DNA of 64,000 nucleotides from Macrostomum lignano (taxonomy: Eukaryota), in assembly GCA_002269645.1 (NCBI GenBank), contig NIVC01002123.1, positions 138,706-202,705 on the forward strand. The letters run 5' to 3'. A program made the position numbers and the translations under genes. Positions 6,605 through 64,000 of the stretch are shown here, piece by piece (position 1 is the stretch's first letter; every line of letters starts with the position of its first letter). Below the pieces are notes generated by a model that saw nothing but the letters and a program-made list of their open reading frames with translations, was not told where the DNA came from and did not search any database.

Positions 6605-6899
6605 GGCCAGAGTTGGCGTCTGGAAGAGCTCTGACTGAGTGATCAACAATTGAAAGTAGAGTTCCACTGTAACCAAAAATTTTCCCATAATTTATCCATA
6701 GCTAAATAATGCTACCCAACTACTCAATAAATTTTAATGATCTTATAATATACATCATTACATCATAGTGAAAGAGTAAATAATGACAGCAATAGTTAAA
6801 CTTGTCACACATAAGTTACATAACTGCGACTCATTTATTTATTGTACAAAAATGGCTGGGACTGCATTTATCTTAACTTGAGTCACCAACCACCCCAAC

Positions 6900-14500: not shown

Positions 14501-14766
14501 TTGGCGACCTGATCGGCCGGGAGCGCTGCCGCACCGGCATCGGCCTGCTGATCCTCTGCCGCGGTGTCGGCGTGGCGATCGGGCCGCCTCTGGCTGGGGC
14601 AATCAAGGACATCAGCGGCTCCTATAAGCTGTCGTTCTGTGCCCTCGGCGCGGCCACTTTCGCTGGCTTCGTCTGCCTGTGCGTGCTGGACGTCGTACTG
14701 CTGCTGCGGGGTCGGCGTCAACGATTGTCGAATCCAGAAGCCACGACTGTTGAGATCGCTACCTGA
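11575..14766 (+). CDS. Monocarboxylate transporter (SLC16/MFS) paralogue 1; join(11575..11764,11876..12619,14285..14766), 471 aa
   Basis: SLC16 signatures [27 protein letters not shown] and TM8 D-x3-R (CDTVSR). GT/AG sites give an in-frame 1416-bp CDS; both introns are phase 1. Confidence 0.93.
12875..13462 (-). mobile_element. 5'-truncated LINE (LOA/I-group-like C-terminal zinc-knuckle region), 588 bp, antisense in MCT1 intron 2
   Basis: Translation [12 protein letters not shown]...[27 protein letters not shown].....CPFC...[20 protein letters not shown] with one frameshift. 13-bp TSD AAATGCATGGCAC at 12862-12874 and 13463-13475. Confidence 0.85.
13468..13592. mobile_element. About 125-bp MITE-like inverted repeat
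   Basis: CATGGCACAGCTCGACTCGT ... ACGAGCCGAGCCGTGTCATG: 20-bp imperfect inverted ends around an AT-rich core. Confidence 0.6.
13771..14095 (+). mobile_element. Diverged relative of the tRNA-SINE family (3' body, about 13915-14095), preceded by a 71-bp direct duplication (13771 and 13842)
   Basis: Shares in order ACATGCCT.ACGA, CTGTACAC, GCCTGCGTAC, CGCGCTTGTATG, GGAGTC, AATGGGCAG and TGTCGCT with the copies at 20678 and 61230. Confidence 0.6.
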
Positions 14767-15913
14767 GTGACGCCTGGCAAGGTTTGCCTTGTTGGCACGA
14801 TTTAGTTCTACCAAATATTGTAGTTAATTTTATAAGACAATTTCTGCAGAGCTTTCTACATAGCTTTATGCATAGCTCTTTACGCAAAAGAGCCGCATGT
14901 TCGAGTTTGAGTTTTGATTTCCTACTCGTATTGCTAATTTTTGGATCAACTATAAGTAGCACTTGAGAGTTTAAATAGCTTGGTTGTAATAAACATTAAT
15001 TTTGCGTTTGCATTCACACAGAGGGTAGTTAATTGTATGATTGGCTCTCGTGTGAGGACTGGATCTCAGTGGAACAGAGTTGGGAACCGGATTTCCCAAT
15101 CCATCTGCAAAATCGCCCGTTTGCAAGTATTTAGCCGTAAACTGTTTCTAATAGAACTTAGTTAAAATAACACGGTTGATGAAGTAGTAAAGAAATGAAT
15201 AAATATTAAAAATAAATGAATGCTTCGAAAAAACAGAAATATTAATTTTTGTACCTTTCTTCTTCTGTTTCTATTTTTTTGTTTTAGTGTAGCCAATATT
15301 TAAATTCAAATTTTGCTTGACGAGCTTTTTTGCTATAACCAGCATTCTAGATGCTTTTCAAACAGCTAGCCCCTCAACATTTTAAAGCAAACTGTCCATT
15401 TTGGCAACAAATTTGTTTTGGCTTTGTCAATTTTTCGACACCATGCACCATGCATATATTTTTTATTGTTTTCCAAGATTTTATCTCAATAACAGGCTTT
15501 TCTGTATGCAAATTTCAATAGTATAAACTAAAGCATACCTTTGCGTAGCTGATTTACAAATAAATTTTTATATCATGCAGTCGATTTCAAACAATCGATA
15601 ACTTTTGGAGCGAGCATGTTTCAAAGAAACACAATTTTGCAAGAGTAAAGAACTACATGTCCTTTGATTACTTGCCATTCTTACTGCATTAGCAAAGGTC
15701 ACTGCAACAGGGCAGATAAACCTTCGCTGTCTGGTTTTTTATCTCTGTCGTAACAGTCTCCTACTTTCAGAGTAGTTTGTACTTGCTGTCTGGGCTATCG
15801 TCAGCAGTGTTAGGATTCTGGGTAGGACTGACTACATTTGCTTTAATTGTTGTAGAGCTACATGTAAATGTAATTACGGCTGCGGTGTGTATTCTGTCTC
15901 GCATGCTCAAGTG

Positions 15914-16501
<588 letters not shown>

Positions 16502-17344
16502 ACACACACACACACACTCAAACGCTCACACATGATGTACAGCGGTACTGACTTTCTAGCTCAAGTTGGGGTTCTCTGACACAGTTAACTTGCCGAGACC
16601 ATTCCGGCGCTCCTCCGCAGTGTCGCAGAGGATATTTGTATACAAAAAGCATTTTACTTGTACATTATTTGATAGGCGCTTGCCTCTGCATGAAATCGTA
16701 TCTGTTAAATTTTGACTAAAGCGAAGTTGAATGGAGTATAGTCTAAAAATGTTTAATTGACTGCACCATTTTACACAAAAAGCGTTTTATGAAGCAAGTA
16801 AACGAAATTTGGTCTTTTTGTCACCATACGGTCATGATCAAACCCTCCGAAATCCGTTCTGAATTGATTCATCAAGTCTTACAGCTAGACCCAGATAGTC
16901 TGAATGTCAATTGCAATCATGTTTCAACATATATCGCTTGAATATTTGAATTGAAACAAAACGTCCTAGTGTACTTTAATTGGGAATTAAGGAACCGTCG
17001 GCATTTGACAATCTAAAAGAGCTCCAGACTGCCAGAAACAAATGCAGATAAGTCAACGGACTGGTTTTGTTATACAGAGAATTGGCGGCGTTGAGCCGCA
17101 CAATTTCACGCCAAAGACTCGTGACTGAAGAGTAGCGGTTTGTTTCAACTAGGCCTTCTATATCAACTGGTATCGTTTAAAGTTTTCTTTGCTGATAAAA
17201 ATTGCTAAAAGTTAACAGAAAAGCAGAAATGATAAAGTTAGCGAGCGGCTTGAAAAAAAACCTCGGATAGCTACCATAAAGTTGAGTAGCGGCAATATTT
17301 GCTGAGAATTACAAGCTTCAACTGAGCGATAAAGTGCAACACGC

Positions 17345-19424
17345 ATGTCTCAAAGTGCAGCACCGGACGGTGGCTGGGGCTGGATGGTGCTGCTGGCGGG
17401 TCACTGCATGCACATTCTGGCCGGCGGGCTTGACAGGGCGTCTGGAGTGTTCTACAGGGAGATCCTCAAAGAGCTGCAGCAGTCTTCTGCCTCCACTGCC
17501 GGCTTCAGCGCTTTGCTGTTCGCTTCCAGGTTCATGAGCGGTGAGTGCAAGGTTCAAGTTGCGTTTCCGCGAAAATGATCAGATTAGAGATTTTAAGAGA
17601 CTTCAAAGAAGACTGATCTAGAGCTTGTATTGCATTTGTCTGGCACACAACGTGAGTTATTCAGTTTCTGAATCACCCAGCAGCAAAAATGTTTACACCG
17701 ATGACTTTCAGGCCCCATTACCGGCGTTCTCTGCAAGTATTTTGGCTGCCGCAGGGTCATGATGGCTGGTGGCGTCACCTCCTTCGTCGGCGTGCTGCTG
17801 AGCTCGTTCTGCCGCAGTCTGTCGCTCATCTACCTGACCCTCGGCTGCATGACGGGAGTCGGCAACGGCCTCGCCTACACTTCTGGCCTCTTGGCTGTCA
17901 ACGACTACTTCAGCCGACGCAAGGCCACCGCCCTCGGCTTGGCGACCGCGGGCACCGGAGTGGGCAGCTTCGTGCTGCCTCTGCTCACCCAGTACCTCAT
18001 CCAGGTGTACTCATTCCGCGGCTGTATGCTCATTCTGAGCGGCCTGTCGCTCAATCTGGTGGTGTGTGGCGCTCTGCTTTACCCGCTGCCTGCTGGGAAG
18101 AAGTCAGCAAATGGAGCGCTCGAGGCGGAGGCTGCAGACGCGACTTCTGAGGCACTCATCGATACAGCAGGTCAGAGTGAAACCGCTGAAAACAAAAACT
18201 CCAAGGATTCCACCGGTGAGAAAGTCCTGGGCCAATCCATGACAACGATCAAGTCAAGGACGTCCCTGGAGCGAAGCGGTCGGGGCTTCTGCATGGAGCT
18301 GTGGGCCAACTTCGATCTGAAGCTGTTCCTCAATCCGTACTTCTGCTTGCTGGCCGCCGCCACTCTGTTCATCTCGTCGGGCTTCAAGTCCGTGGCGGTG
18401 ATCCTGCCGCACCATGCGCAGCTTCGTGGTCTGGACGACATGACATCTGTTCTGCTCATATCCATATCCGGTAGGTTCGCATCAAGTACTTTTTTAACTA
18501 TGCATACTTCGTTTTGAAGACGGGTTTCGCCAAAACACACTACGGAAATAGGAGAGTTCTAATTAACTGCACTAGACGCGCAGTTCTGCACTGACAAGCT
18601 GTAAAATGCGCGATGTATGATCTATGTCCGACTTGCCTTCGATATTATGCTCGTATTATAGATTCAGTGAACATTCGATGCTCGTCCAAATGTATTGGTG
18701 TACTTGATGTAAATGTACTTAATTCCTATAACCCAAAGGCGATCGAAGGTTCGAAAGTCCATGCGGGACTTGGTTTAGTAAGCAGGATTCTTTCTGCAGT
18801 AGGACGTTGCGGTGAAAATTTACTGTTGTGGGTGCCGTTTTTTAGTGCAGAAGTAACTATTTCTTTTTATTTCTTTCTATTTCTGAAAATTACCATCATA
18901 ATATTAAATTAAAAATTATGCACATTTTCTGCCCAGGCGCCTGCGACACTGTGTCCAGATTCTCAGTGGGGCTGTTCTTCGACATCCCCCACCTGGTGCC
19001 GCACCGAAGGCGCATCTGGACACTCGGCATGCTGCTCACCGCCTCCAGCATCACAGCCTTCGCCTTCATGCAAAATTTAATACCGTTCATCCTGATCTCG
19101 GGAGCGTTCGGCCTGACCTCCGGGCTGTTCATGAGCCAGTTGTACTGCATGCTGATTGACCTGATCGGCAGGGAGCGGTCCCGCTCCGGCATCGGCCTGC
19201 TGATCCTCTGCTTCGGCTTCGGCGTGGCCGTCGGACCGCCGACAGCGGGCGCGCTGAAGGACGTCACGGACACTTACCAGCTGTCATTCTGCGTGCTCGG
19301 CGCGTCCACCTTCGTCGGCTTCGTCTGTCTGTGCGCGCTGGACGTCGCGCTGATGACGCAGCGACGACAGCGACGGCGGCTGAATTTGAACCCTACCCTG
19401 GATATTTCCGTAGAGAAAAAGTAA
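17345..19424 (+). CDS. Monocarboxylate transporter (SLC16/MFS) paralogue 2; join(17345..17540,17712..18470,18937..19424), 480 aa
   Basis: PDGGWGWMV motif; same intron positions and phases as paralogue 1; in-frame 1443-bp CDS. Confidence 0.93.
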
Positions 19425-22242: not shown

Positions 22243-22858
22243 NNNNNNNNNNNNNNNNNNNNNNNNNNNNNNNNNNNNNNNNNNNNNNNNNNNNNNNNNN
22301 NNNNNNNNNNNNNNNNNNNNNNNNNNNNNNNNNNNNNNNNNNNNNNNNNNNNNNNNNNNNNNNNNNNNNNNNNNNNNNNNNNNNNNNNNNNNNNNNNNNN
22401 NNNNNNNNNNNNNNNNNNNNNNNNNNNNNNNNNNNNNNNNNNNNNNNNNNNNNNNNNNNNNNNNNNNNNNNNNNNNNNNNNNNNNNNNNNNNNNNNNNNN
22501 NNNNNNNNNNNNNNNNNNNNNNNNNNNNNNNNNNNNNNNNNNNNNNNNNNNNNNNNNNNNNNNNNNNNNNNNNNNNNNNNNNNNNNNNNNNNNNNNNNNN
22601 NNNNNNNNNNNNNNNNNNNNNNNNNNNNNNNNNNNNNNNNNNNNNNNNNNNNNNNNNNNNNNNNNNNNNNNNNNNNNNNNNNNNNNNNNNNNNNNNNNNN
22701 NNNNNNNNNNNNNNNNNNNNNNNNNNNNNNNNNNNNNNNNNNNNNNNNNNNNNNNNNNNNNNNNNNNNNNNNNNNNNNNNNNNNNNNNNNNNNNNNNNNN
22801 NNNNNNNNNNNNNNNNNNNNNNNNNNNNNNNNNNNNNNNNNNNNNNNNNNNNNNNNNN
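22243..22858. other. Assembly gap (616 N)
   Basis: Run of N. Confidence 0.99.
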
Positions 22859-30033: not shown

Positions 30034-31221
30034 TCAGTCGCTCAGGTACCCATCGCAGTAGGTGGAGGTGCCCACCGGGGCCTCGGTGGCGGCCGCGACA
30101 GACAGCAGCTCTTCGGCTTCTCGTCTGCCGGCCGCCCCCGCCGCCGCTCCATCGGCCACGTCTCGAGCCGGTGCCGGCCGCATCGTCAAGGCCTCCCTTC
30201 CCCGACGACCGCCGACGCCAGCAGCGGATCCGCCAGCGGCGGCGGCGTCGGCATCGCTGCAGCCGGCCTGAGCCAGCAGCCCGCCAAGTCCGGTGCGGAA
30301 CGAGTCGTTCAAGAAAGCGTAGAGCACCGGGTTGCCAGCGCTGCCAACGTAGCTCAGCAGGGTCGTCAGGTGCGAACTGTGCGCCATCCAGGCGGCCGGC
30401 TCGGCCACGGACAAGGTGAAGATGACGTGGATCCAGTGCGGCAGCGAGCAGCCCAGGTAGAAGGCCACCACAGCCGTCACCAGCATCGTCACTCGCTCGA
30501 ACCTCGCCGCTGCTCCGCCGCCTCCGCCGCCTCCGCTGGCGGCCCTGGCCAGCCGCAGGCGATGCAGCTTGCGCAGAATGAGGCCGTAAAATCCGGCCAG
30601 CAGGACGGTGGGCAGCAGGCAGCCCACGGCGAACATGTACCAACTCGAGTGCTCCGCGTCAAGGAAAAACCGGCGCAGCGGCGAGGCGGCAGCCAGGGTG
30701 CCGTTCTCGTCGAAGCTGCTGTGCACGCAGAATTTGACGTCGGTCACGTTAAGCTCGTCCGAGCCCATGCGGTGCACGTGGGCGCAGAGGCCGATGGGCA
30801 GCATTGCCAGGGCGCCGAGGAACCACAGGGCCACCAGGAGGCTGATGGCGAAGCCGCGGCTACGGTAGCGCTGCGAGGTGAACGGCGACACGACGGCCTT
30901 GTAGCGATCGAATCCCATGGCAACGATGATGAAGATGCTGACTGTCCAGTTGGTGTAGTACAGGATGTAGTACATGGTGCAGGCGCCGGAGCCCCAGGGC
31001 CAGCTGCCCACCAGAGTGAGGTGGATCAGCGGCGGCACAGACAGCAGGTGAAGGATGTCAGCAACGGCCAGGTTAACCAGGTAGATATTGATGACCGTGT
31101 GGGCGGCCTTCTGCGTGAGCACCACAATCAGTACTAGCAGGTTTCCTATGAAGCCCAAGGCGAATACGCAGCTCAAGGCGACATTGTTGGCCAACAGGAA
31201 GCCCCTGGACAGATCAAGCAT
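30034..31221 (-). CDS. Class A peptide GPCR, somatostatin/allatostatin-C/MCH/opioid-receptor-like, single coding exon of 395 aa or more
   Basis: GN in TM1, NIYLVNLAVAD in TM2, ECL1 WPWG + Cys, DRY, TM4 W, ECL2 Cys, TM5 LLP, TM6 CSLP, NPVLY and helix 8 SFR. A possible in-frame acceptor at 31297 (TTTCTAG|GAA) could extend the N-terminus. Confidence 0.92.
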   Translation of the reverse strand: MLDLSRGFLLANNVALSCVFALGFIGNLLVLIVVLTQKAAHTVINIYLVNLAVADILHLLSVPPLIHLTLVGSWPWGSGACTMYYILYYTNWTVSIFIIVAMGFDRYKAVVSPFTSQRYRSRGFAISLLVALWFLGALAMLPIGLCAHVHRMGSDELNVTDVKFCVHSSFDENGTLAAASPLRRFFLDAEHSSWYMFAVGCLLPTVLLAGFYGLILRKLHRLRLARAASGGGGGGGAAARFERVTMLVTAVVAFYLGCSLPHWIHVIFTLSVAEPAAWMAHSSHLTTLLSYVGSAGNPVLYAFLNDSFRTGLGGLLAQAGCSDADAAAAGGSAAGVGGRRGREALTMRPAPARDVADGAAAGAAGRREAEELLSVAAATEAPVGTSTYCDGYLSD

Positions 31222-35527: not shown

Positions 35528-38500
35528 ATGGGTCAGGGATTGGGCCGGAAAGAGTGCGAAGAGGTTCAGCGGAATTATCGATGTGAGTTGGGGAGTTGAG
35601 CTTCGATCGATGTGCCACTTCTAGGGAGTTTGGGGCGCCATTTTGAGAGTTAGGGGCGCCACTTTTAGAGAGTTAGGGACGCCACTTTTAGAGAGTTAGG
35701 GGCGCCACTTTTAGAGAGTTAGGAGCCTCATTTTGAGAGTTAGGTACGCCACTTTTAGAGAGTTAGGAGCCTCATTTTGAGAGTTAGGTACGCCACTTTT
35801 AGAGAGTTAGGAGCCTCATTTTGAGAGTTAGGGGCGCCACTTTTAGAGAGTTAGGAGCCTCATTTTGAGAGTTAGGGGCGCCACTTTTAGAGAGTTAGGA
35901 GCCTCATTTTGAGAGTTAGGTACGCGCCACTTTTAGAGAGTTAGGAGCCTCATTTTGAGAGTTAGGTACGCGCCACTTTTAGAGAGTTAGGAGCCTCATT
36001 TTGAGAGTTAGGTACGCGCCACTTTTAGAGAGTTAGGAGCCTCATTTTGAGAGTTAGGTACGCGCCACTTTTAGAGAGTTAGGAGCCTCATTTTGAGAGT
36101 TAGGTACGCGCCACTTTTAGAGAGTTAGGAGCCTCATTTTGAGAGTTAGGTACGCCACTTTTAGAGAGTTAGGAGCCTCATTTTGAGAGTTAGGGGCGCC
36201 ACTTTTAGAGAGTTAGGAGCCTCATTTTGAGAGTTAGGTACGCGCCACTTTTAGAGAGTTAGGAGCCTCATTTTGAGAGTTAGGTACGCGCCACTTTTAG
36301 AGAGTTAGGGACGCCACTTTTAGAGAGTTAGGGGCGCCACTTTTAGAGAGTTAGGAGCCTCATTTTGAGAGTTAGGTACGCCACTTTTAGAGAGTTAGGA
36401 GCCTCATTTTGAGAGTTAGGTACGCGCCACTTTTAGAGAGTTAGGAGCCTCATTTTGAGAGTTAGGTACGCGCCACTTTTAGAGAGTTAGGAGCCTCATT
36501 TTGAGAGTTAGGGGCACCACTTTTAGAGAGCTTGGGCGCATTTTTAGGGAGTTAGAGGCGGCATTTTTAGGGAGTTAGAGGCGGCATTTTTAGGGAGTTA
36601 GAGGCGGCATTTTTAGGGAGTTAGGGGCGGCATTTTTAGGGAGTTAGAGGCGGCATTTTTAGGGAGTTAGAGGCGGCATTTTTAGGGAGTTAGAGGCGGC
36701 ATTTTTAGGGAGTTAGGGGCGGCATTTTTAGGGAGTTAGGGGCGGCATTTTTAGGGAGTTAGGGGCGGCATTTTTAGGGAGTTAGAGGCGGCATTTTTAG
36801 GGAGTTAGAGCGCCACTTTTTGGACAGTCCGTTTGAGAGGGTTCTTACCAATCAGACCGCCAATATGCCTCACCAACCCTTCCCAAATATCGCAGTGGAC
36901 GAAGACGAACTGGACGCCTGGGTTCGCGTGTTCCAGCGCTACTGCCGGCGCCGTCGCAACAACGAGATGGACTTCGACGGCTTCTGCAAGGCTTTCGCCG
37001 AGAGCGGCGAGTCCAGGACAAATTTGCAGAAGATTTTCGCCGTGTTCGATTGGGACAAAAACGGCGTGATCTCCTTCAATGAGTTCATGTTCGCCGTGCT
37101 GGTGAACAGCAGGGTGTCCTCGAGAGTCAAGTTAAAGTGTGCGTGCTGGGTCGGGGGCTGAGTGGGTCATTAGATCTATGAATCAAGAAATCTGTAGGTC
37201 AAGGGATTGCTGGGTCAAGGGATCTGCGGGTCAAGGGATTGCTGGGTTAAAGGATCTGTTCGTCAGTGGATCTATGGGTCAAGGGATCTGTGAGTGAAGT
37301 TATCTGTGGGTCAGTGGATCGGTGGGTCAAGTGATCTGTGAGTCAAGGGATTTTTGGGTCAAGGGATCTGTGGGTTAATGGATCAGTGAGTCAATGGATC
37401 TGAGGGTCAAGGGATCTGTGGGTTAATGGATCAGTGAGTCAATGGATCTGAGGGTCAAGGGATCTGTGGGTTAATGGGATCTGTGGGTTAATGGATCAGT
37501 GAGTCAATGGATCTGAGGGTCAAGGGATCTGTGGGTTAATGGGATCTGTGGGTTAATGGATCAGTGAGTCAATGGATCTGAGGGTCAAGGGATCTGTGGG
37601 TTAATGGGATCTGAGGGTTAATGGGATCTGTGGGTTAATGGATCAGTGAGTCAATGGATTTGAGGGTCAATTTTCCGATCAAAAGACTTAAAGTTAGTAG
37701 AGCTCGAGAACAAAGTTTATGCATCAAAAGAAGTCTGCTTCGGTGACAATATCTTTTAAGTAAAAGTTACATGGCACCTGTCCACATTTGCAGTCGCATT
37801 CGATATGATTGACCGAGACGGGAATGGCGAGATTGACGAGAGAGAGCTAATGGACCTGGTGTTCCGCATCAGCTCCACCAAGTCCATGCTCATGTTCGAT
37901 GATGAAACTCCTATAAGCGAAGAGCTAGTGCACGATACTTTTAGGAATATGGACACCGTGAGTGAAAACAATATTCAGTGTTGTTATGGTGACTAGACTC
38001 GCAGTGACTGCCACAATTTGTGCCACAATCAGTGCCACAATCAGTGCCACAATCAGTGCCACAATCAATGCCACAGACAGTGCCACAATCAATGCCACAA
38101 TCAGTGCCACAATCAATGCCACAGACAGTGCCACAATCAGTGCCACAATCAGTAACACAGTCAGTGCCACAATCAGTGCCACAATCAGTGCCGCAATTTT
38201 TGGCACAATCAGTGCCACAATCAGTGCCACAATCAGTGCCGCAATTTTTGGCACAATCAGTGCCACAATCAGTGCCACAGACAGTGCCACAATCAGTGCC
38301 ACAATCAGTAACACAGTCAGTGCCACTATCAGTGCCACAATCAGTAACACAGTCAGTGCCACTATCAGTGCCACAATCAGTGCCACAGTCAGTGCCACAA
38401 TCAATGCCACAGTCAGTGCCACAATCAATGCCACAGTCAGTGCCACAATCAGTGCCACAATCAGTAACACAGTCAATGCCACAGACAGTGCCACAATCAG

Positions 38501-38661
38501 TGCCACAGTCAGTCAGGCAGTGCCGCTTCCCAACTGGCATTCAAAAAATCCCTCTCACACCGCAGAACGGTGATGGCAGCATCTCGCTCGATGAGTTCTT
38601 GGAGCAGGTGGGCCGCCACGGGGAGTGGATTTTGAAGCTGCTGGAAATCCGTCATCGCTGA
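35528..38661 (+). CDS. Neuronal calcium sensor (recoverin/GCAP/NCS)-like EF-hand protein A; join(35528..35582,36896..37138,37794..37957,38566..38661), 185 aa
   Basis: N-terminal MGQGLG; canonical loops [24 protein letters not shown] and DT|[10 protein letters not shown]; degenerate EF1; GT/AG sites give an in-frame 558-bp CDS. Confidence 0.9.
35620..36815. repeat. Intron-1 minisatellite: 44-46-bp dimer (TTTTAGAGAGTTAGGAGCCTCATTTTGAGAGTTAGGTACGCGCCAC) switching to 23-bp TTTTTAGGGAGTTAGAGGCGGCA near 36540
   Basis: Direct reading. Confidence 0.95.
37195..37670. repeat. Intron-2 minisatellite of about 16-bp monomers (GGGTCAAGGGATCTGT) with a 48-bp higher-order unit
   Basis: Period 48 (37381 to 37429). 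Confidence 0.9.
38005..38515. repeat. Intron-3 12-bp minisatellite (CAGTGCCACAAT)
   Basis: Direct reading; in-frame period gives spurious ATIS/VPQS ORFs. Confidence 0.95.
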
Positions 38662-39978: not shown

Positions 39979-43739
<3,761 letters not shown>

Positions 43740-49360: not shown

Positions 49361-50632
49361 AATAAACTCCCAACTCCACAGAGATGAGTCATAGACTATT
49401 TAAATGAATCTAATATGCTACTTTGTATTTGACTTGTAATTTTAAATTGTAATTTTATAAAATCTTTAGTTTTTTGCCTAGCCCTAGCCTAGGTTTTATT
49501 TAATTACATTAAAATGTAGTTATAGATAGATAGATCTATTTATCATTGAACCAATCAAAAAGGTGACAATTATAAAACCTAGTATATATAGATACTAGTC
49601 AATTTGGTGACAAGTTGCATTTGTGGTAGACATGCTTCATATTTTATGAAAAATTAAAATTTCATGAGTATAGTATAGTCATTTTAGTGATAAGAAGCTT
49701 CATAATATTAATTTGTAACTGTTTTGTTAAGATTTATGTTTTGTATATATATTTGAAAGTTTCTATCAAAAGATTAATATATTAAAGAAAAAATCAAACT
49801 AATTAGATTTTTTTGTGCAGATCATTTTAAATTGTCCTAGAATATTTAAACATAGAAACCATCGACCTATAAAGAATCCTCATAAAATTCTGACCATAAT
49901 AAAAGCAGAGCTATTCACTGGATTTCGATTAGAAAACATAAATTCAAAAGATCACAATTCTATATTTGTCTGTAAATTTTCTCTGTAAACTTTAATGATA
50001 AAAACATTTCTTTTTTAATATAGCCTTAAAATAATCTTTAATAAAAAACTTTTTTATAGATATCTCTACAAATAACACCTAAAATTTTGTTCTTTTGCCT
50101 ATACTATATATACTATATCTGTACCCATAGCTAAGTACTCGTAATTTCCTCTTTAGCCTCTATCACACAATATGCACATAGAGTCAAAAATCTTGGTTGT
50201 ATGAGTCCTCAATCCCAAGGACTTAAGAGTTCCCCTGGCAACATTCATTTAATAATTTATTTCTATCCTCCAATCTATTAACCCAAGAGCTCTAATGATT
50301 AATGGATAAAACTGCAAAGGTTTGCAAGAAATATCAATCTAGTTGCAAATGCTATTTTTAGCAAATATGCCAGACTGTATAAGCATATGACTGATCTTGT
50401 TCTAAATCTTCTCAACAGCCAGCCATATATCTGTATCTGAATCTAAAGCTTTTGAAAAATTAGTTCAATAAATAAGGTAATTGCCACTTTCCAAAGATAC
50501 ATTGCAACACTATAATTATGAGCATACTTTTTTGCCACCCCTCGTAATGAAATAAAAATCGTTAAAAGTTGAACCAATATTTAACGGGCTGTAATCTTAA
50601 CATTGCATGCGATAGCAACTAAAAAGTACATC

Positions 50633-53600
50633 ATGACCACCAAGCTGTTCGGCAAGGACCTGAAGGAGTACGAGGACATCGATGTTGACGAGCTGCTAGC
50701 CAAGCTCACGCCGGAGGAGATTGACGAGCTTAACAGCGAGTTGGACCCCGACAACTCCCTGCTGCCGCCCTCGCAGCGCTGCCGCAACCAGACTGACAAA
50801 GAGCCGACTGGACCGTTCGACCGGGACCGGCTCATTAAATTCTTGCGCGACCAGGCAGCCAAAGAGAAGGACTGGGAAGAGGCTGTGCCGTACGAGAAGA
50901 AGACCCGGGGCAAAGTGTTCGTGCCCAAGGAGCAGTCGGTCAAAGCGTTCAGCGATCAGGATCTGGCCGATATGGGACTCGATCCCGAGACTGAGGACGT
51001 CCTGCGCAACGCCAGCGAAGAGGAGATCGTTGATCTGGCCGCAGCTCTGGGCTTCAGCAGCATCATGAATCAGGTTGGCGATCTGGGAGATCGATAGGGG
51101 GATTGGAGATCTAGATGAGATCTAGAGGGAGGAAGGAGATCTAGAGGGAGAGAGGAGATCTAGAGGAAGATAGAGAGGGGATCTAGAGGAAGATAGGGAG
51201 GGGATCTAGAGGGAAAGAGGAAATCTGGAGGGAAAAAGAAAATCTAGACTTTAAAAGGGATAGTGGAGATCCAGAGGGAGAGAGGAGATCTAGAGGGAGA
51301 GAAAAGATCTAGGAGAGAGGAGATCTAGAGGAGAGAGATCTAGAGGGAGAGAGGAGATCTAGAGGAGAGAGATCTAGAGGGAGAGAGAAGATCTAGACTT
51401 TTAGAGGAATAGAGGAGATCCAGAGGGAAAGTGGAGATCTAGAGGGAGAGAGGAGATCTAGAGGGAGAGAGAAGATCTAGAGGAGAGAGATGTAGAGGAA
51501 GAGAGGAGATCTAGAGGGAGAGAGAAGATCTAGAGGAGAGAGATCTAGAGGAAGAGAGGAGATCTAGAGGAAGAGAGGAGATCTAGAGGAGAGAGATCTA
51601 GAGGAAGAGAGGAGATCTAGAGGGAGAGAGGAGATTTAAAGGGAGAGAGGAGATTTAGAGGGAGAGAGGAGATTTAGAAGGAGAGAGGAGATCTAGAGGG
51701 AGGTTGGAGATCTAGAAGGAGAGAGGAGATCTAGAGGAAGAGAGATCTAGAGGGAGAGAGGAGATCTAGAGGAAGAGAGGAGATCTAGAGGGAGAGAGGA
51801 GATTTAGAAGGAGAGAGGAGATCTAGAGGGAGGTTGGAGATCTAGAAGGAGAGAGGAGATCTAGAGGGAGAGAGGAGATCTAGAGGGAGAGAGAAGATCT
51901 AGAGGAGAGAGATCTAGAGGAAGAGAGGAGATCTAGAGGAAGAGAGGAGATCTAGAGGGAGAGAGGAGATCTAGAGGAGAGAGATCTAGAGGAAGAGAGG
52001 AGATCTAGAGGGAGGTTGGAGATCTAGAGGGAGAGAGGAGATCTAGAGGAGAGAGATCTAGAGGGAGAGAGGAGATTTAGAGGAGAGAGATCTAGAGGGA
52101 GAGAGGAGATCTAGAAGGAGAGAGGAGATCTAGAGGAGAGAGATCTAGAGGGAGAGAGGAGATTTAGAAGGAGAGAGGAGATCTAGAGGGAGGTTGGAGA
52201 TCTAGAAGGAGAGAGGAGATCTAGAGGAAGAGAGATCTAGAGGGAGAGAGGAGATCTAGAGGGAGGTTGGAGATCTAGAAGGAGAGAGGAGATCTAGAGG
52301 GAGGTTGGAGATCTAGAGGGAGAGAGGAGATCTAGAGGGAGAGAGGAGATCTAGAGGAAGAGAGGAGATCAAGAGGGAGGTTGGAGATCTAGAGGGAGAG
52401 AGGTGATCTAGAGGAAGAGAGGAGATCAAGAGGGAGGTTGGAGATCTAGAGGGAGAGAGGAGATCTAGAAGGAGAGAGGAGATCTAGAGGGAGGTTGGAG
52501 ATCTAGAGGGAGAGATGATCTAGAGGAAGATCTAGAAGGAGAGAGGAGATCTAGAGGAAGAGAGATCTAGAGAAAGATTGGAAATCTAGAGGGAGCTAGG
52601 AGATCTAGAGGCAGATTGGAAATCTGAAGAAAGATAGCAAATCTGGAAGAAAACGAGGGCGGAGTATAGAAAGAGGCTACGAGATAGCGGTGGAGAAGCA
52701 GGAAGCAGGAGTTCCTCCTAAGAGCGCGCTGCCAACCCAGTGTTTGGGTAATAATTAAGCTAAAATGCCAGGTTATTGTGCCTAGGAATGCTGAGTCAGA
52801 AGCAAGCTAATAACATTTCACATGCAGCCCTCTTCAAGGGCAACTGAAATCTGTGCAGATTGAATTCAGTCAATGCAAATAGTCAATTCAGTATGTTTCC
52901 ATTTGTAAGTGTGTGAAAGTAAATAGTTGGCGAGGAGTTGGTCTGGCACAATTTAAACATTGCATACACAGTTTTTGATATACACAGTTCGTTTGCACAA
53001 ACAACTATGGGTGTGCAAGAGCTTTTTTTAATCCTATAGGTTTTTAATTCTAAATAGGTTTTTTAGACTAACGAAGCGTTAGATTTTGAAGCCTATTATA
53101 AGTGTGAATCCCATAAATTTCACAGATCCTATAATGCCACGAATTTCACAGATCCCAATAATCCCATCAATTTCTTAGATAACATATCAGAATCCCATAA
53201 ATTTCACAGATCCGATCCAAAATCCCATAAATTTCTCAGATCCCATCCAAAATCCCATAAATTTCACAGATCCCATCAAAAATCCAATAAATTTCTCAGA
53301 TCCCATCCAAAATCCCATAAATTTCACAGATCCCATCAAAAATCCAATAAATTTCTCAGATCCCATCCAAAATCCCATAAATTTCACAGATCCCATTTAA
53401 AATCCCATAAATTTCTCAGATCCAATAAAAAATCCCATAAATTTCTCAGATCCCAAATCCCATAAATTTCATATGCACTAAGCTCCCATCTGAACCTCCG
53501 CTGCCGTCTCCCCCGCCGCAGGTCCAGTACTGGGACTCTGTGAAAAACTCCGGCCAAAGCCTGGAAGGCGGCTTCACCGCCACGGCCAAGTCCGAGCTCA

Positions 53601-59747: not shown

Positions 59748-62700
59748 TCAGAGCGCACTGTTGAAGCACTCAGCCGTCAGCTTCTCACAGCTCGGAGCGG
59801 TCAGCAGCACCGCGGTCCAAAAGGTGGCCACGAACAGAGTCCACCACACTGGCAGCACAATCATCGCCAGCAGGCTGCACCCGTTACGCTGTCGTCCCGG
59901 GTTCGAACCGCGACGATTTCGCTGTCGCCGCCGCTGCCGGTGTCGCTGTTGCTGCTGCTGCAGCTGCAGCTGCTGCCGGTCTGCTGCCGTCAGCCTCGCT
60001 GTTGACGCCTGCGGCATGTGCGGCTGCGGCGGGAGCGGCTCCGCCAGGCCGAACAGGTCCAGGTTGTCGAGGACTCCGTGATGGCCGTGCACTTTGAGGA
60101 CCTCGGTCCTTCTGGTAAATCATCGTCTGTGGAAGCATTGTCATTGAGAGGTTCTGCTTTGAGAAAGTCTAATCTGACACATTGTCCCGCCTGACACCAA
60201 CCACATCTGACACCAACCAAGTCTGACACCAACCACATCTGACACCAACCACATCTGACACCAACTACATCTGACACCAACCACATCTGACACCAACTAC
60301 ATCTGACACCAACCACATCTGACACCAACCACATCTGACACCAACCACATCTGACACCAACCACATCTGACACCAACCACATCTGACACCAACCACATCT
60401 GACACCAACCACATCTGACACCAACCACATCTGACACCAACCACATCTGACACTAACCCTATCTGAAACTAACCCTATCTGAAACTAACCCTATCTGACA
60501 CCAACCACATCCGACACTAACCACATCTGACACCAACCACAACTGACACCAACTACATCTGACACTAACCCTATCTGAAACTAACCCTATCTGAAACTAA
60601 CCCTATCTGAAACTAACCCTATCTGACACCAACCACATCTGACACCAACCACATCTGACACCAACCACATCCGACACTAACCACATCTGACACCAACCAC
60701 ATCTGACACCAACCACATCTGACACCAACCACATCCGACACTAACCCTATCTGACACCAACCACATCTGACACCAACCACATCTGACACCAACCACATCT
60801 GACACCAACCACATCCGACACTAACCACATCTGACACCAACCACATCTGACACCAACCACAACTGACACCAACCACATCTGACACTAACCCTATCTGACA
60901 CCAACCACATCTGACACGAACCACATCTGACACTAACCCTATCTGAAACTAACCCTATCTGACACTAACCACATCTGACACCAACCACATCTGACACCAA
61001 CCACAACTGACACCAACCACATCTGACACTAACCCTATCTGACACCAACCACATCTGACACGAACCACATCTGACACTAACCCTATCTGAAACTAACCCT
61101 ATCTGACACCAACCACATCTGACACCAACCACATCTGACACCAACCACAACTGACACCAACCACATCTGACACTAACCCTATCTGACACCAACCACATCT
61201 GACACTAACCCTATCTGACACCAACCATAGGGGGCCGTAGCCCAGCGGTAGCGCAGCTGCTCTGGTGTGCCAGCGACCCAGGCTTGATTCCAAGTGCAGT
61301 CACATTAATTTGGGGCTGAATTGGAATCTCGGCTTGGCTCTGCTCGTGCAATTAACGGCCTTGAGAGCCAACCCCCCAAGGCGCAGTGAAGTGTACATGC
61401 CTAACGATATTATAAAGTTAGGGCCGCTGTACACTCCTGTGTGAGTGTGTGCCTGCGTACGTATCCGCGCGCTTGTATGCCTGCTCAGGGGAGTCGGCGG
61501 AATGGGCAGTAATGCCTCTCGCCGGTTGTGTGCCTATGTCGCTTAAAGTGCGCCAGGGTGCACACAACCCCCTGCCTCTAAAAAAAAAAAGACACCAACC
61601 ACATCTGAAACTAACCACATCTGACACCAACCACAACTGACACCAACCACATCTGACACTAACCCTATCTGACACTAACCCTATCTGACACTAACCCTAT
61701 CTGACACTAACCCTATCTGACACTAACCCTTATCTGACACTAACCCTATCTGACACTAACCCTTATCTGACACTAACCCTATCTGACACTAACCCTATCT
61801 GACACTAACCCTATCTGACACTAACCCTATCTGACACTAAGCCCTCCTGACAACTCACCCCATTGTAGCTGTGCTTGGCCGATCTCGGCAGCTGCAGCGG
61901 ATCCTCAGCAGCCGCAACCTCATCAAGCAGCTCCTCGTCCCCGGGCTCGTTGGACTTCTTGGCCAGTGCGGCCATCAGGCAGCAGCAGATCACGAAGGTG
62001 CACATGGCGTACCAGATGTCCATGGCGTTCACGTAGTGACCAGCCGGCGACCAGTTGAAGATGAGGATGTGCAGCAGGGCCAGGTTGATGAACAGTCGAG
62101 TTGTGCGATCGAAAAAGTACACAGTGGTGAGCGACAGCAGCACCATGATGAAGGACAAGCCGTACTGCCTGACAGCCGGCAGCATCTCATCCAAGCCGGT
62201 CCTGATGCAGATCCGGGTCCAGAACTGGAACTTGCGGCCTGCGACATTGCCAGGGGTAATCGTTTTTGACACTACGTTATTTACTACTCAATAAACAACT
62301 CAGTAAACTGCTCATTAAACTACTCAATAAACTACTCAGTAAAATTCTCAATAAACTGCTCAACAAAACTACTTTATAAACTGCTCAATAAATTGCTCAA
62401 CAAACTACTCAATAAGCTACTCAATAAACTTCTCAATAAACTGCTCAATAAACTACTTAATAAACTGCTCAATAAACTGCTCAACAAACTACTCAACAAA
62501 CTACTCAATGAACTACTCAATAAACTCAATAAACTACTCAATAAACTCAATAAACTACTCAATATACTGCTCAACGAACTACTCAATAAACTACTCAATA
62601 AACTACTCAACAAACTACTCAATAAACTACTCAATGAACTACTCAACAAACTACTCAATAAACTACTCAATGAACTACTCAACAAACTACTCAATAAACT

Positions 62701-63890
62701 ACTCAATAAACTACTTAGTAAACTACTCAATAAACTACTCAAATAAACTACTCAACAAACTGCTCAATAAACTACTCAATAAACTACTTAGTAAACTACT
62801 CAATAAACTACTCAATAAACTACTCAACAAACTACTCAATAAACTACTCAATGAACTACTCAACAAACTACTCAATAAACTACTCAATAAACTACTTAGT
62901 AAACTACTCAATAAACTACTCAATAAACTACTCAACAAACTGCTCTCAATAAACTACTCAATAAACTACTCAGTAAACTGCTCATTAAACTACTCAATAA
63001 ACTACTCAGTAAACTGCTCAATAAACTACTCAATAAACTACTCAGTAAACTGCTCAGTAAAATTCTCAATAAAACTACTCAATAAACTACTCAATAAACT
63101 GCTCAACAAACTACTCAACAAACTACTCAATAAACTACTCAACATTCGTTTGGAGCATGTGAGCGTTAAAATTGGCCGGTAAGTTGTGCGTAAACAGCCA
63201 TGATGGCCAACCCCAAGGCACAAGACTGTACATGCCTGCAGAATAAAAAATCAGGGCTATTTTTTAGAGGCAGGGGGTGCTGTGCACCCTGTCTCACTTT
63301 AAGCGAAATTGTCACACAACTGGCGAGAGGCATTACTGCCATTCCGCCGACTCCCCTGAGCAGGCACTCACACAGGAGTGTACAGCGACCCAACTTTATT
63401 TATCTTCAGGCATGTACACTTCACTGTGGCTTGGGGGTCGGTCCTCAAGGCCGTTAACTGCACGAGCAGAGCCAAGCTGAGATTCCAATTTAGCCCCAAA
63501 TTAATGCGACTGCACTTGGAATCGAGCCTGGGCCGCTGGCACATCAGAGCGCCACCTTGTGTGCATGCATAACTGTGTGAAATGCATGACCTAGCTAGCT
63601 ACCATTGTCGGTGAACGGCTTGGACAGCCGATAGACGAACGAGTATCTTTGATCGTCCACCCGGGTGCAGTTGAGCTGGTGCCGCCTGCCGAGGCTCATG
63701 TGGATGGAGCGCTGGTTCTCCGGGTTTGCTAAAATCAAGCCGATAGTCCGAATGTATTGCTCAATTTAGTAATCATAATTCTAAATTCAAAGCTTGTCAG
63801 AGCTCACCTTCTTCGAAGATTAACACGCAAAGGATGTCGCCAAATGGATGCTGCATTGCGGGACCATCGCATCGGATCCTGGCTCTGTGC
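59748..63890 (-). CDS. Divergent Cys-loop ligand-gated ion channel subunit (GlyR/GluCl/GABA-like lineage), 3' part; exons 63808..63890, 63603..63728, 61859..62238 and a last exon ending at 59748 (5' boundary 60101 or 60111 unresolved)
   Basis: 83-bp exon encodes C-x13-C (RCDGPAMQHPFGDILC). Phase 2/1/1 junctions fit. M1 QYGLSFIMVLLSLTTVYFF, M3 YVNAMDIWYAMC (cf. YVKAIDIWM), M4 LLAMIVLPVWWTLFVATFW. 5' exons lie beyond the window. Confidence 0.8.
60192..61840. repeat. 16-bp minisatellite with two monomer types (CTGACACCAACCACAT and CTGACACTAACCCTAT) in the channel gene intron
   Basis: Direct reading; interrupted by a SINE at 61230. Confidence 0.96.
61230..61590 (+). mobile_element. Apparently full-length tRNA-derived SINE (about 360 bp) with poly(A) tail
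   Basis: GGGGCCGTAGCCCAGCGGTAG (A box) and GGCTTGATTCC (B box); body; A11 tail; GACACCAACCA on both flanks (61217-61227 and 61591-61601; within a minisatellite, so weak as a TSD). Confidence 0.85.
62285..63143. repeat. 12-bp minisatellite (TAAACTACTCAA)
   Basis: Direct reading; LLNK/LLSS ORFs are artefacts. Confidence 0.96.
63260..63553 (-). mobile_element. tRNA-derived SINE copy, 5'-truncated, with an internal deletion in the 3' body
   Basis: Reverse complement matches the 61230 copy from the B box to the CCCCTGCCTCTAAAAA tail. Confidence 0.82.
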
Positions 63891-63904
63891 CTGCGGGAGT
63901 GCGG

Positions 63905-64000
63905 GCAGTGGGTGTCTGTCCGAGTGGAGTGTCTGTCCGAGTGGTGCTGTCTGTCCGAGTGGGTGTCTGTCCGAGTGGGTGTCTTGTCCGAGTGGGCTGT
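63905..64000. repeat. 16-bp minisatellite (GTGGGTGTCTGTCCGA) running off the 3' edge
   Basis: Direct reading. Confidence 0.85.

What the first reader, a model, noticed from the sequence alone, without database searches (positions are those of the whole stretch)
61859..63890. Cys-loop channel subunit with a radically non-canonical pore and gating elements
Seen: an intact C-x13-C loop with central Pro, but HPFGD instead of FPxD. Loop C has no cysteines (RLSKPFTDNGRKFQFW). M1 lacks the conserved Pro (QYGLS vs xYIPS). The selectivity motif is TTR rather than PAR (anion) or xEK (cation). M2 reads R0'-LFINLALLHILIFNWSP: no Thr/Ser rings, His at 9', and the M2-M3 Pro at 17' rather than 23', about 6 residues shorter. 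M3 keeps YVNAMDIW. Established (from memory): an 83-bp phase 2/1 Cys-loop exon is conserved in GlyR/GABA-A genes, supporting that ancestry. Inference: a novel subunit class (non-conducting, accessory, or pH/metal-gated through His9') in an invertebrate receptor expansion.
Basis: partly seen in the sequence, partly recalled or inferred. Interest (0 to 1): 0.72.

Follow-up and report, generated by a model that had tools for sequence, protein, structure and literature searches.

The report
Highly divergent flatworm Cys-loop receptor subunit
The end of this window holds the last four exons of a real but very unusual Cys-loop receptor subunit gene of the flatworm Macrostomum lignano; its odd, short, greasy pore helix is shared with one sister gene, so it is not random decay, but this assembled copy has two one-base frame breaks and no function has been tested.

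Summary
The organism is Macrostomum lignano. The locus is already present in UniProt as fragmentary, uncharacterised gene models.

I found a fourth exon (60126-59748) that carries the intracellular loop, M4 and the stop codon. An exhaustive HMMER search of 1.84 billion proteins found only one relative, a 538-aa M. lignano paralogue (A0A1I8FW04, about 50% identical). This paralogue passes Pfam's Neur_chan_LBD threshold. It shares every odd feature: the shifted Asp in the Cys loop, Leu for the M1 Pro, and the hydroxyl-free M2 that is 5-6 residues short. M2 is the best conserved block between the two genes (77% identity, against 34% in the intracellular loop).

So this is a constrained, lineage-specific offshoot of the GlyR/GABA-A/GluCl branch, not a decayed sequence.

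Caveats:
- "His at 9'" depends on the alignment register; HMMER and MAFFT place His at 7' and keep Leu at 9'.
- This copy has two single-base frame breaks in exon 4, which may be assembly errors or decay of a duplicated (homeologous) copy.
- Function is inferred only. Structure prediction failed.

The parts
63808..63890 (-). Cys-loop exon, 83 bp, phases 2/1. Encodes (W)HRARIRCDGPAMQHPFGDILCVLIFEE.
   Evidence: Translation and splice contexts. tblastn of the paralogue P0005 residues 221-248 gives 61% identity. Same length and same 3' boundary and phase as mouse Glra1 exon 5. The paralogue also reads HRA...RC, so the window's frame is the right one.
63729..63807 (-). Intron of 79 bp. UniProt models P0002 and P0007 read through part of it and skip the Cys-loop exon.
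63603..63728 (-). Loop F / loop C exon, 126 bp, phases 1/1. Encodes ANPENQRSIHMSLGRRHQLNCTRVDDQRYSFVYRLSKPFTDN(G).
   Evidence: P0002 is 98-100% identical. The paralogue is 52% identical.
62239..63602 (-). Intron filled by a 12-bp minisatellite (62283-63142) and a SINE-like element (about 63200-63560).
61859..62238 (-). Exon of 380 bp, phases 1/0. Encodes beta10, pre-M1, M1 (QYGLS...), the M1-M2 loop (FFDRTTR), M2 (LFINLALLHILIFNWSP), M3 (YVNAMDIW...) and the start of the intracellular loop.
   Evidence: P0001 is 98% identical (A0A1I8GIB1). The paralogue P0004 is 58% identical, E 1e-35. The best PDB matches (GluCl, GlyR) fall on this exon.
60127..61858 (-). Intron with 16-bp minisatellites (60191-61227 and 61591-61845) and a SINE-like element (about 61230-61590). 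That element is the inverted partner of the one in the previous intron.
59748..60126 (-). Last exon (379 nt as assembled; 381 nt would be in frame). Encodes the intracellular loop, M4 (LLAMIVLPVWWTLFVATFWTAVLL), a C-x6-C tail and TGA. Similarity to the paralogue runs through three successive frames, implying one-base deficits near 60105 (CC against CCC) and near 60068 (G against GG).
   Evidence: P0001 and P0007 read DPRSSKCTA across the first site. tblastn of the paralogue's M4 hits 59867-59766, E 0.001.
63891..64000 (-). Upstream intron (17-bp tandem repeat). The N-terminal exons lie beyond the window end.
   Evidence: The N-terminal peptides of P0002 are not found in the window.

Best explanation
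The window ends inside a real gene of Macrostomum lignano, which I call gene A. [quoted passage not shown]

Gene A has one paralogue, gene B (A0A1I8FW04). Together they form a small lineage-specific clade.

Kept from the family scaffold:
- the Cys-loop disulfide pair with its central Pro
- the LWTPxFVFxN strand
- four transmembrane helices
- the M2-M3 Pro at the canonical distance from M3
- the M3 motif A[ML]DIW
- the ancestral 83-bp exon

- the Cys-loop Asp is shifted by one residue
- the M1 Pro is replaced by Leu
- no Arg is found at the canonical pre-M1 position
- the PAR motif is absent
- M2 has no Ser or Thr, is about twice as hydrophobic as GlyR M2, and is 5-6 residues shorter than in GlyR

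These traits are shared by two genes that are only about 50% identical, and M2 is their best conserved block. They are therefore old and selected, not decay (shown).

Inferred mechanism: whichever register is used, the pore-facing stripe is Phe/Ala/His/Phe or Asn/Leu/Leu/Trp. A homomeric pore would then be narrow and water-repelling. The subunit most likely does not gate and conduct as a classical Cys-loop channel. It would act as a non-canonical subunit, either silent or modulatory in heteromers, or opened by a different trigger.

This particular assembled copy carries two one-base frame breaks in the last exon. These could be assembly errors, or early decay of one duplicated (homeologous) copy in this recently polyploid genome.

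The confidence of 0.6 is for the whole statement. The identity as a constrained, divergent pLGIC gene I put at about 0.9. The functional reading (silent or modulatory subunit) I put at about 0.3.
For: Identity and organism:
- Three UniProt M. lignano models match at 79-100%, and cluster members were listed.

Family:
- The composite of gene A gives Neur_chan_LBD at E 0.0044, below threshold.
- The paralogue P0005 gives 29.7 bits against a cut-off of 26, E 5e-7.
- A two-sequence profile searched against the PDB returns only pLGIC-superfamily entries (receptor chains and acetylcholine-binding proteins) among its 30 hits with E up to 1. The best is GlyR alpha2 at E 3.4e-4, and GABA-A delta spans both the extracellular and transmembrane domains.
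- hhalign against a GlyR alignment gives probability 82%, E 1e-5, over 227 columns.
- The 83-bp exon has the same end point and phase as mouse Glra1 exon 5.

Constraint:
- Identity between A and B is 77% in the M1-M2 loop plus M2, against 34% in the intracellular loop with 42 gap columns. Fisher p = 5e-4.
- There is no stop in the 196 codons of exons 1-3, whereas 88% of neutral simulations at 22% amino-acid divergence gain at least one.
- All splice sites are canonical.
- B is an intact 538-aa open reading frame with a signal peptide, a full extracellular domain and M1-M4.

Uniqueness:
- Only A and B were found among 1.84e9 representative proteins.

Pore chemistry:
- M2 contains 0 Ser/Thr against 6 in GlyR, and has mean hydropathy 1.9-2.0 against 0.9.
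Against: - Neither A nor B reaches any Pfam Neur_chan_memb score.
- The window copy itself stays below the LBD cut-off.
- Exon 4 of this copy needs two frame corrections to reach M4.
- Other assembled copies or gene models (P0003, P0007) carry different frame disruptions.
- No transcript, ortholog or DNA of the paralogue was available, so dN/dS could not be computed.
- Both AlphaFold2 runs failed (pLDDT 39.6 and 37.0). The pore geometry is therefore argued from sequence only.
- The M2 register is ambiguous.
- The stop-codon argument is only moderately strong (p about 0.12 if the divergence is split evenly between the two lineages).
Confidence: 0.6

Rival explanations
1. The window copy is a pseudogene. 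It would be a redundant duplicated (homeologous) copy of gene A, decaying after the recent whole-genome duplication of M. lignano. The clade itself, or gene B at least, may still be functional.
For: - There are two one-base frame breaks in exon 4. As assembled, the in-phase frame runs into an Ala-rich peptide and a TAA without M4.
- Other copies show other disruptions, for example P0003 loses the second Cys-loop Cys.
Against: - Both breaks are single-base contractions of short homopolymers (CCC to CC, GG to G). This is the typical long-read assembly error.
- P0001 and P0007 read through the first site in frame.
- Each copy is broken at a different place.
- Peptide similarity to B is still clear in all three frames, so any break is very recent.
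- Exons 1-3 have no stop and perfect splice sites.
Confidence: 0.3
2. It is a working ligand-gated channel with a new gate. This is the reader's idea: a homomer or heteromer opened by protons or metal ions through the conserved M2 His, or by an unknown ligand.
For: - The His, two Asn and the Trp of M2 are invariant between A and B. This suggests a specific role for M2 rather than a plain hydrophobic plug.
- The Cys-loop tip and its partner elements at the domain interface (the pre-M1 region and the M2 / M2-M3 stretch) have changed together. This fits a re-tuned rather than an abandoned coupling interface.
Against: - His is at 9' only in one of three possible registers.
- In every register the pore-facing stripe contains large hydrophobic rings (Phe/Phe or Leu/Leu/Trp) and no hydroxyl ring.
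- The M1 Pro and the F/YPxD geometry, which cluster in the coupling pathway in known pLGICs (PMC4795631), are lost.
- Under the MAFFT alignment with GlyR, the loop-B aromatic residues are absent.
Confidence: 0.12
3. It is a chance resemblance or a gene-prediction artefact, not a Cys-loop family member at all.
For: - The window-encoded peptides alone give no Pfam hit.
- Single-sequence phmmer against the PDB gives only E 0.42.
- The UniProt models are mutually inconsistent.
Against: - The paralogue passes Pfam's curated LBD cut-off.
- The profile search of the PDB returns only pLGIC-superfamily entries.
- hhalign gives E 1e-5 over both the extracellular and transmembrane domains.
- The 83-bp exon position and phase are conserved.
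- Four hydrophobic helices occur in the right order, with Y-V-N-A-M-D-I-W at the start of M3.
Confidence: 0.03

Closest known systems
Glutamate-gated chloride channels (C. elegans GluCl alpha, PDB 3RHW; the flatworm GluCl clade of Dufour et al. 2013, PMC3757052)
   Same: - Best single-sequence PDB match.
- Shared FDRT in the M1-M2 loop and Y[IV][KN]A[IM]D[IV]W at M3.
- Same overall order of Cys loop, loop C and M1-M4.
- Flatworms are known to have their own anionic pLGIC clade.
   Different: - No PAR motif.
- No loop-C Cys pair at the canonical positions.
- No Thr/Ser rings in M2.
- Nine fewer residues between FDRT and the M3 motif.
- M1 Pro is lost.
- Similarity is far below family thresholds (E 0.42). 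Not one canonical GluCl reaches E 0.001 against the transmembrane exon in 1.84e9 proteins.
Vertebrate glycine and GABA-A receptor subunits
   Same: - Best profile matches: GlyR alpha2 at E 3.4e-4 and GABA-A delta across both domains. hhalign probability 82%.
- The 83-bp Cys-loop exon ends at the same codon and phase as Glra1 exon 5.
- The next exon boundary falls in the Gly of N-T-G|K-F against D-N-G|R-K-F. The vertebrate exon size used for this comparison is from my memory.
   Different: - About 20% identity.
- Under the MAFFT alignment, the loop-B aromatic residues and the beta-strand core Trp are not conserved.
- The second exon is 126 bp rather than 138 bp.
- M1-M3 are fused into one 380-bp exon.
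- The gating and pore motifs differ as listed above.
Orphan, fast-evolving lophotrochozoan pLGICs (for example Alvinella Alpo4, PMC10338036) and the 'Cys-less' metazoan pLGICs (PMC4795631)
   Same: - Lineage-restricted and phylogenetically isolated.
- No known agonist.
- Unusual pore and loop-C features.
- They show that invertebrate genomes hold pLGICs that escape motif-based censuses.
   Different: - Alpo4 and its relatives are nAChR-like (cationic branch) and keep the F/YPxD and M1 Pro signatures.
- The Cys-less clade lacks the Cys pair, whereas A and B keep the Cys pair and have lost other signatures.
- The nematode YPFE variant is shifted toward the N-terminus. Here the Asp is shifted toward the C-terminus.

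Membership tests
pLGIC / Pro-loop superfamily (conserved residues of Jaiteh et al. 2016, Table 1) | Absolutely conserved Pro in the beta6-beta7 (Cys) loop | tested here: met
   CDGPAMQH-P-FGDILC in gene A and CDGPALQY-P-LSDTLC in gene B. The Pro is at +8 from the first Cys, as in GlyR.
pLGIC / Pro-loop superfamily | Aromatic residue (F 71% / Y 25%) before the Pro, and Asp (93%) at Pro+2 (F/YPxD) | tested here: not met
   Gene A has His before the Pro; gene B has Tyr. In both, Pro+2 is Gly or Ser and the Asp sits at Pro+3.
pLGIC / Pro-loop superfamily | [quoted passage not shown] | tested here: inconclusive
   The beta10-to-M1 stretch is 4 residues shorter than in GlyR. No Arg lies at the canonical distance from the M1 Tyr. 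Basic residues lie at -13 and -2 instead, and the result depends on the alignment.
pLGIC / Pro-loop superfamily | M1 Pro that makes the kink (77%, Gly 5%) | tested here: not met
   QYGLS in gene A and QYCLS in gene B, against MYIPS in GlyR. Both have Leu.
pLGIC / Pro-loop superfamily | M2-M3 loop Pro (88%) | tested here: met
   S-P-AGH-YVNAMDIW against L-P-KVS-YVKAIDIW in GlyR. The spacing to M3 is identical.
pLGIC / Pro-loop superfamily | Buried aromatic residue (W/F/Y) of the extracellular beta-sandwich core | tested here: inconclusive
   MAFFT pairs the GlyR Trp (IFEW) with Gln or Gly in A and B, and there is no aromatic residue nearby. The alignment in this stretch is weak.
pLGIC / Pro-loop superfamily | Pfam curated thresholds (Neur_chan_LBD PF02931; Neur_chan_memb PF02932) | tested here: inconclusive
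   LBD: gene B scores 29.7 bits against a cut-off of 26 (met). The gene A composite scores 16.9 bits (not met). The transmembrane model gives no hit for A or B at E up to 10.
pLGIC / Pro-loop superfamily | Beta-rich extracellular domain followed by four transmembrane helices, with a long M3-M4 loop | tested here: met
   The order and hydropathy of M1-M4 fit. The profile and hhalign alignments span both domains. The 3D models were too poor to count as evidence.
Metazoan Cys-loop receptors | Two Cys separated by 13 residues flanking the beta6-beta7 loop | tested here: met
   C-x13-C in the window copy and in gene B. It is broken in the copy behind P0003.
Anion-selective branch (GlyR / GABA-A / GluCl) | Pro-Ala-Arg at M2 -2' to 0' | tested here: not met
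   DRTTR in gene A and DRSTR in gene B. There is no Pro, and also no Glu at -1', so it is not the cationic signature either.
Anion-selective branch (GlyR / GluCl) | Second disulfide across loop C (C-x10-C around NTG) | tested here: not met
   There is no Cys 7 residues before the conserved Gly. One Cys (TRIC) aligns with the second loop-C Cys, and another conserved Cys lies about 31 residues upstream.
Anion-selective branch (GlyR / GABA-A) | Shared intron positions: an 83-bp Cys-loop exon, phases 2/1 | tested here: met
   83 bp, ending one nucleotide into the 7th codon after the second Cys. This matches mouse Glra1 exon 5 (F159X on duplication).
Conducting pLGIC pore | Polar 2' and 6' rings and Leu 9' (75%) in an M2 of about 23 residues from 0' to the Pro | tested here: not met
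   M2 contains no Ser or Thr. It has 17 residues from the Arg to the Pro in gene A, against 23 in GlyR. Leu 9' is kept only in the register where the Arg is at -2'.

The most novel reading that the evidence does not exclude
Genes A and B would represent a previously undescribed class of Cys-loop-derived membrane protein. [quoted passage not shown] On this reading it would be a natural 'pseudo-channel' or an obligate auxiliary subunit. Alternatively it would be a channel with a new gating principle. Motif- and Pfam-based censuses of flatworm receptors would have missed it.
Probability: 0.25. Interest if true: 0.7.

Novelty: new variant of a known kind. Interest (0 to 1): 0.45.

Why it matters
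pLGICs are defined by a handful of residues at the interface between the ligand-binding domain and the pore (PMC4795631). Here a natural lineage keeps the fold and the disulfide loop but has lost or moved most of those residues, and it maintains a short, greasy M2 under constraint.

If it is expressed, it becomes a natural experiment on which coupling elements are really needed for assembly, gating and conduction. It is also a candidate for a non-conducting or auxiliary Cys-loop subunit.

There is a practical lesson too. Receptor censuses in flatworms that filter on PF02932 and the F/YPxD motif (PMC6881066) will miss such genes. M. lignano is a transgenic and RNAi-tractable model, so the question can be tested.

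Tried and rejected
- **Pfam on the window peptides alone:** no hit.
- **Word-indexed homologue searches** with gene A and with the paralogue: these returned only M. lignano models or the query itself.
- **Spliced composite protein:** the exhaustive search and structure prediction tools did not accept it. I therefore used only the contiguous M1-M3 exon for the exhaustive search.
- **AlphaFold2 on the paralogue**, alone and with a shallow alignment of paralogue plus GlyR sequences: both gave unusable models (pLDDT 39.6 and 37.0).
- **Foldseek with the second model:** it lists only pLGICs, but at TM-scores of 0.15-0.2. It is also circular because GlyR rows were in the alignment, so I do not count it.
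- **DNA of the paralogue or of other copies, for dN/dS:** not on record.
- **Alternative canonical M2 exon:** tblastn of GlyR against the whole window found only the M3 stretch of the known exon.
- **Other copies of the gene in the window:** none found.
- **Alternative acceptors that would splice exon 3 directly into the M4 frame:** considered and rejected. The paralogue shows the G|T(F/M) junction and the following peptides are conserved, so the exon starts at 60126 and the frame changes lie inside it.
- **tRNA scan of the SINE-like element:** negative.
- **First MAFFT run that included the read-through models:** it misaligned the Cys loop and was discarded.


Full report
**What is in the sequence.**
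The finding lies on the minus strand at the very end of the window.
- 63890-63808: 83 bp, phases 2/1. Encodes HRARIRCDGPAMQHPFGDILCVLIFEE.
- 63728-63603: 126 bp, phases 1/1. Encodes ANPENQ...YRLSKPFTDNG.
- 62238-61859: 380 bp, phases 1/0. Encodes RKFQFWTRICIRTGLDEMLPAVRQYGLSFIMVLLSLTTVYFFDRTTRLFINLALLHILIFNWSPAGHYVNAMDIWYAMCTFVICCCLMAALAKK...SYNG.

The introns are filled with 12-17-bp minisatellites and a SINE-like element. That element occurs as an inverted pair on either side of the M1-M3 exon.

**Organism and existing records.**
A word-indexed search found three UniProt models from Macrostomum lignano at 79-100% identity. Cluster look-up added a fourth. All are fragmentary and mutually inconsistent.
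- P0002 and P0007 read through intron sequence and skip the Cys-loop exon.
- P0003 carries a frame-broken Cys-loop exon.
- P0001 and P0007 stop shortly after the third exon.

The locus is therefore already in public databases as uncharacterised automatic models. One of them is even named 'Protein wntless'.

**The rest of the gene.**
The next exon starts at 60126 (acceptor ccacag|ACG) and runs to a TGA at 59748-59750. It contains a clear M4 (LLAMIVLPVWWTLFVATFWTAVLL) and a short tail.

M4 is not in the frame set by the splice site. Comparison with the paralogue shows that similarity runs through three successive frames:
- TMIYQKD, in phase with the splice site
- GPRSSKCTAITESS, in a second frame
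- DNLDLFGLAE...M4...SAL*, in a third frame

The shifts correspond to single missing bases in a CC run near 60105 and at a G near 60068. The exon is 379 nt as assembled; 381 nt would be in frame. P0001 and P0007 read DPRSSKCTA, so they have the extra C.

Both sites are short homopolymers, and every assembled copy is 'broken' somewhere different. That fits long-read assembly error. But M. lignano is a recent hidden polyploid, so decay of one duplicated (homeologous) copy is equally possible. I cannot decide this with the tools at hand. The N-terminal exons lie beyond position 64000.

**Is it a Cys-loop receptor?**
The window peptides alone give no Pfam hit. A composite with the off-window N-terminus from P0002 gives Neur_chan_LBD at 16.9 bits, below the cut-off of 26. 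Single-sequence phmmer against the PDB puts GluCl alpha first, but at E 0.42.

The decisive result came from the exhaustive HMMER search of 1.84 billion representative proteins with the M1-M3 exon. It returned only the gene itself and one other protein, P0004 (E 2.9e-31, 59% identity). Its cluster contains a full-length 538-aa model, A0A1I8FW04 (P0005), also from M. lignano. This paralogue, gene B, has these properties:
- It passes Pfam's curated Neur_chan_LBD threshold (29.7 bits, E 5e-7).
- A two-sequence profile of A and B searched against the PDB returns only pLGIC-superfamily entries (receptor chains and acetylcholine-binding proteins) among its 30 hits with E up to 1. GlyR alpha2 is best at E 3.4e-4, and GABA-A delta is matched across both domains.
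- hhalign of that profile against a GlyR alignment gives 82% probability and E 1e-5 over 227 columns.

The gene structure agrees with this. Mouse Glra1 exon 5 is 83 bp, and its duplication produces F159X. That exon therefore ends one nucleotide into the seventh codon after the second Cys, exactly as here (PMC3484359).

Membership of the superfamily, with descent from the anionic branch, is well supported. The transmembrane half, however, is invisible to Neur_chan_memb.

**Are the odd features real or decay?**
Gene B shares all of them.

| Feature | Gene A (window) | Gene B | GlyR |
|---|---|---|---|
| Cys loop | CDGPAMQHPFGDILC | CDGPALQYPLSDTLC | Asp at Pro+2; in A and B it is at Pro+3 |
| M1 motif | QYGLS | QYCLS | MYIPS |
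| M1-M2 loop | FFDRTTR | FFDRSTR | ends in PAR |
| M2 | LFINLALLHILIFNWSP | LLINLALLHILLLNWQP | 23 residues from Arg 0' to the Pro |

Identity between A and B by region is as follows:

| Region | Identity |
|---|---|
| M1-M2 loop plus M2 | 77% |
| M1 | 60% |
| Extracellular exons | 50-56% |
| M2-M3 linker plus M3 | 46% |
| Intracellular loop | 27-38%, with 42 gap columns |

M2 against the intracellular loop gives Fisher p = 5e-4.

There is no stop in the 196 codons of exons 1-3. In neutral simulations, 88% of runs gain a stop at 22% amino-acid divergence and 99% at 45%. This pattern is that of a protein under domain-specific purifying selection for most of the time since the duplication. The unusual M2 is the most constrained part.

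**How far it departs from the family.**
Jaiteh et al. (PMC4795631) list seven residues conserved across all pLGICs. [quoted passage not shown]
- Kept in A and B: the Cys-loop Pro, and the M2-M3 Pro at exactly the canonical distance from M3.
- B keeps the aromatic residue before the Pro; A has His.
- The Asp is displaced by one position.
- The M1 Pro is Leu.
- The pre-M1 Arg and the core Trp are not found at the aligned positions. The alignment is weak there.
- The stretch from beta10 to M1 is four residues shorter than in GlyR.
- The PAR motif and the canonical loop-C Cys pair are absent. However, a conserved Cys (TRIC) aligns with the second loop-C Cys, and further invariant Cys residues occur at HQxNC and as C-x6-C in the tail after M4.
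- M2 has no Ser or Thr (GlyR has six in the same span) and about twice the mean hydropathy.

**M2 register.**
- Arg at -2', as placed by phmmer against GluCl, hmmsearch against GlyR, and MAFFT. This gives Asn 2', Leu 6', His 7', Leu 9' and Trp 13', with the deletion in the upper half of M2.
- FDRT anchored on the GluCl FDRT without a gap. This gives His 6', Ile/Leu 9' and Ser/Gln 13'.

The M2-M3 Pro is fixed relative to M3, so the missing 6-8 residues lie within M2 or the first part of its linker. In the first two registers the stripe that would face the pore is dominated by large hydrophobic side chains (Phe-Ala-His-Phe, or Asn-Leu-Leu-Trp). The third register (Leu 2', His 6', Ile/Leu 9', Ser/Gln 13') also has no hydroxyl ring at 2' or 6'.

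**Mechanism (inferred).**
A short pore helix without hydroxyl rings, loss of the M1 kink, and a rebuilt contact between the Cys loop, pre-M1 and the M2-M3 stretch all point one way. A and B probably do not gate and conduct as classical Cys-loop channels.

M2 is nevertheless the best conserved block, with an invariant Asn, His, Asn and Trp. It therefore does something specific: helix packing in a heteromer, a gate with a different trigger, or a non-conducting structural role. I commit to 'non-canonical, probably silent or modulatory subunit' as the most likely reading, with low confidence.

The structural route to test this failed. AlphaFold2 gave pLDDT 39.6 and 37.0. The Foldseek hits to pLGICs at TM-scores of 0.15-0.2 carry no weight.

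**Novelty.**
Nothing else among 1.84e9 proteins resembles the transmembrane exon at E up to 0.001. A published census of flatworm LGICs selected candidates through PF02932-based HMMs and manual inspection for the F/YPxD motif (PMC6881066). That procedure would probably exclude these genes.

The closest described things are:
- the flatworm GluCl clade (PMC3757052)
- orphan lophotrochozoan receptors such as Alpo4 (PMC10338036)
- the Cys-less pLGICs (PMC4795631)

I rate this a new variant of a known kind. Interest is moderate. The sequence departure is striking and conserved. But the evidence rests on two gene models in an error-prone polyploid assembly, this copy is frame-broken as assembled, and there is no expression or functional data.

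Noticed in passing
window 61259-61585 and 63260-63550: A SINE-like element of about 350 bp occurs as an inverted pair (90-92% complementary) in the two introns that flank the M1-M3 exon. ARAGORN finds no tRNA in it. Inverted repeats that bracket an exon can promote exon skipping or circular RNA.
   Followed up: partly
window 59748-59830 (post-M4 tail), 63660-63670 (HQLNC), 62200-62215 (TRIC): Genes A and B share extra invariant cysteines: HQxNC in the extracellular domain, TRIC at the start of beta10, and C-x6-C in the extracellular tail after M4. This suggests non-canonical disulfides, possibly tying the tail to the extracellular domain.
   Followed up: no
window 11836-14766 and 17759-19424 (+): Two tandem paralogous MFS-type transporter genes (MFS_1, E 7e-25 and 4e-13 for exons of the first copy). 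The second copy has near-identical exon peptides.
   Followed up: partly
window 30034-31221 (-): An uninterrupted 395-aa open reading frame for a rhodopsin-family GPCR (7tm_1, E 3e-43).
   Followed up: partly
window 50603-51097 (+): An exon encoding a complete tropomodulin N-terminal domain (Pfam Tropomodulin, E 6e-55).
   Followed up: partly
window 36820-38661 and 42722-43739 (+): Two paralogous EF-hand genes in tandem. Their C-terminal exons are similar ([28 protein letters not shown] and GDGYISFGEFVQNVERHGAWILRLFDIR). Long minisatellites between the exons create spurious long ORFs.
   Followed up: partly
window 6146-6688 (-): An exon with a BSD domain (E 5e-12).
   Followed up: no
window 22243-22858: An assembly gap of 616 N. 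It shows that the window comes from a scaffolded draft assembly, which is relevant to how far single-base indels can be trusted.
   Followed up: no
window 15770-16580: A trinucleotide repeat of about 700 bp (GTT/AAC type) gives long poly-V, poly-T, poly-S and poly-Y ORFs in all frames.
   Followed up: no
UniProt models P0002, P0003, P0007 against window 63600-63900: The public gene models for this locus disagree with one another. Two skip the Cys-loop exon by reading intron sequence. One has the exon in a broken frame (AQS... instead of the HRA... that is conserved in the paralogue). One model is named 'Protein wntless'.
   Followed up: yes
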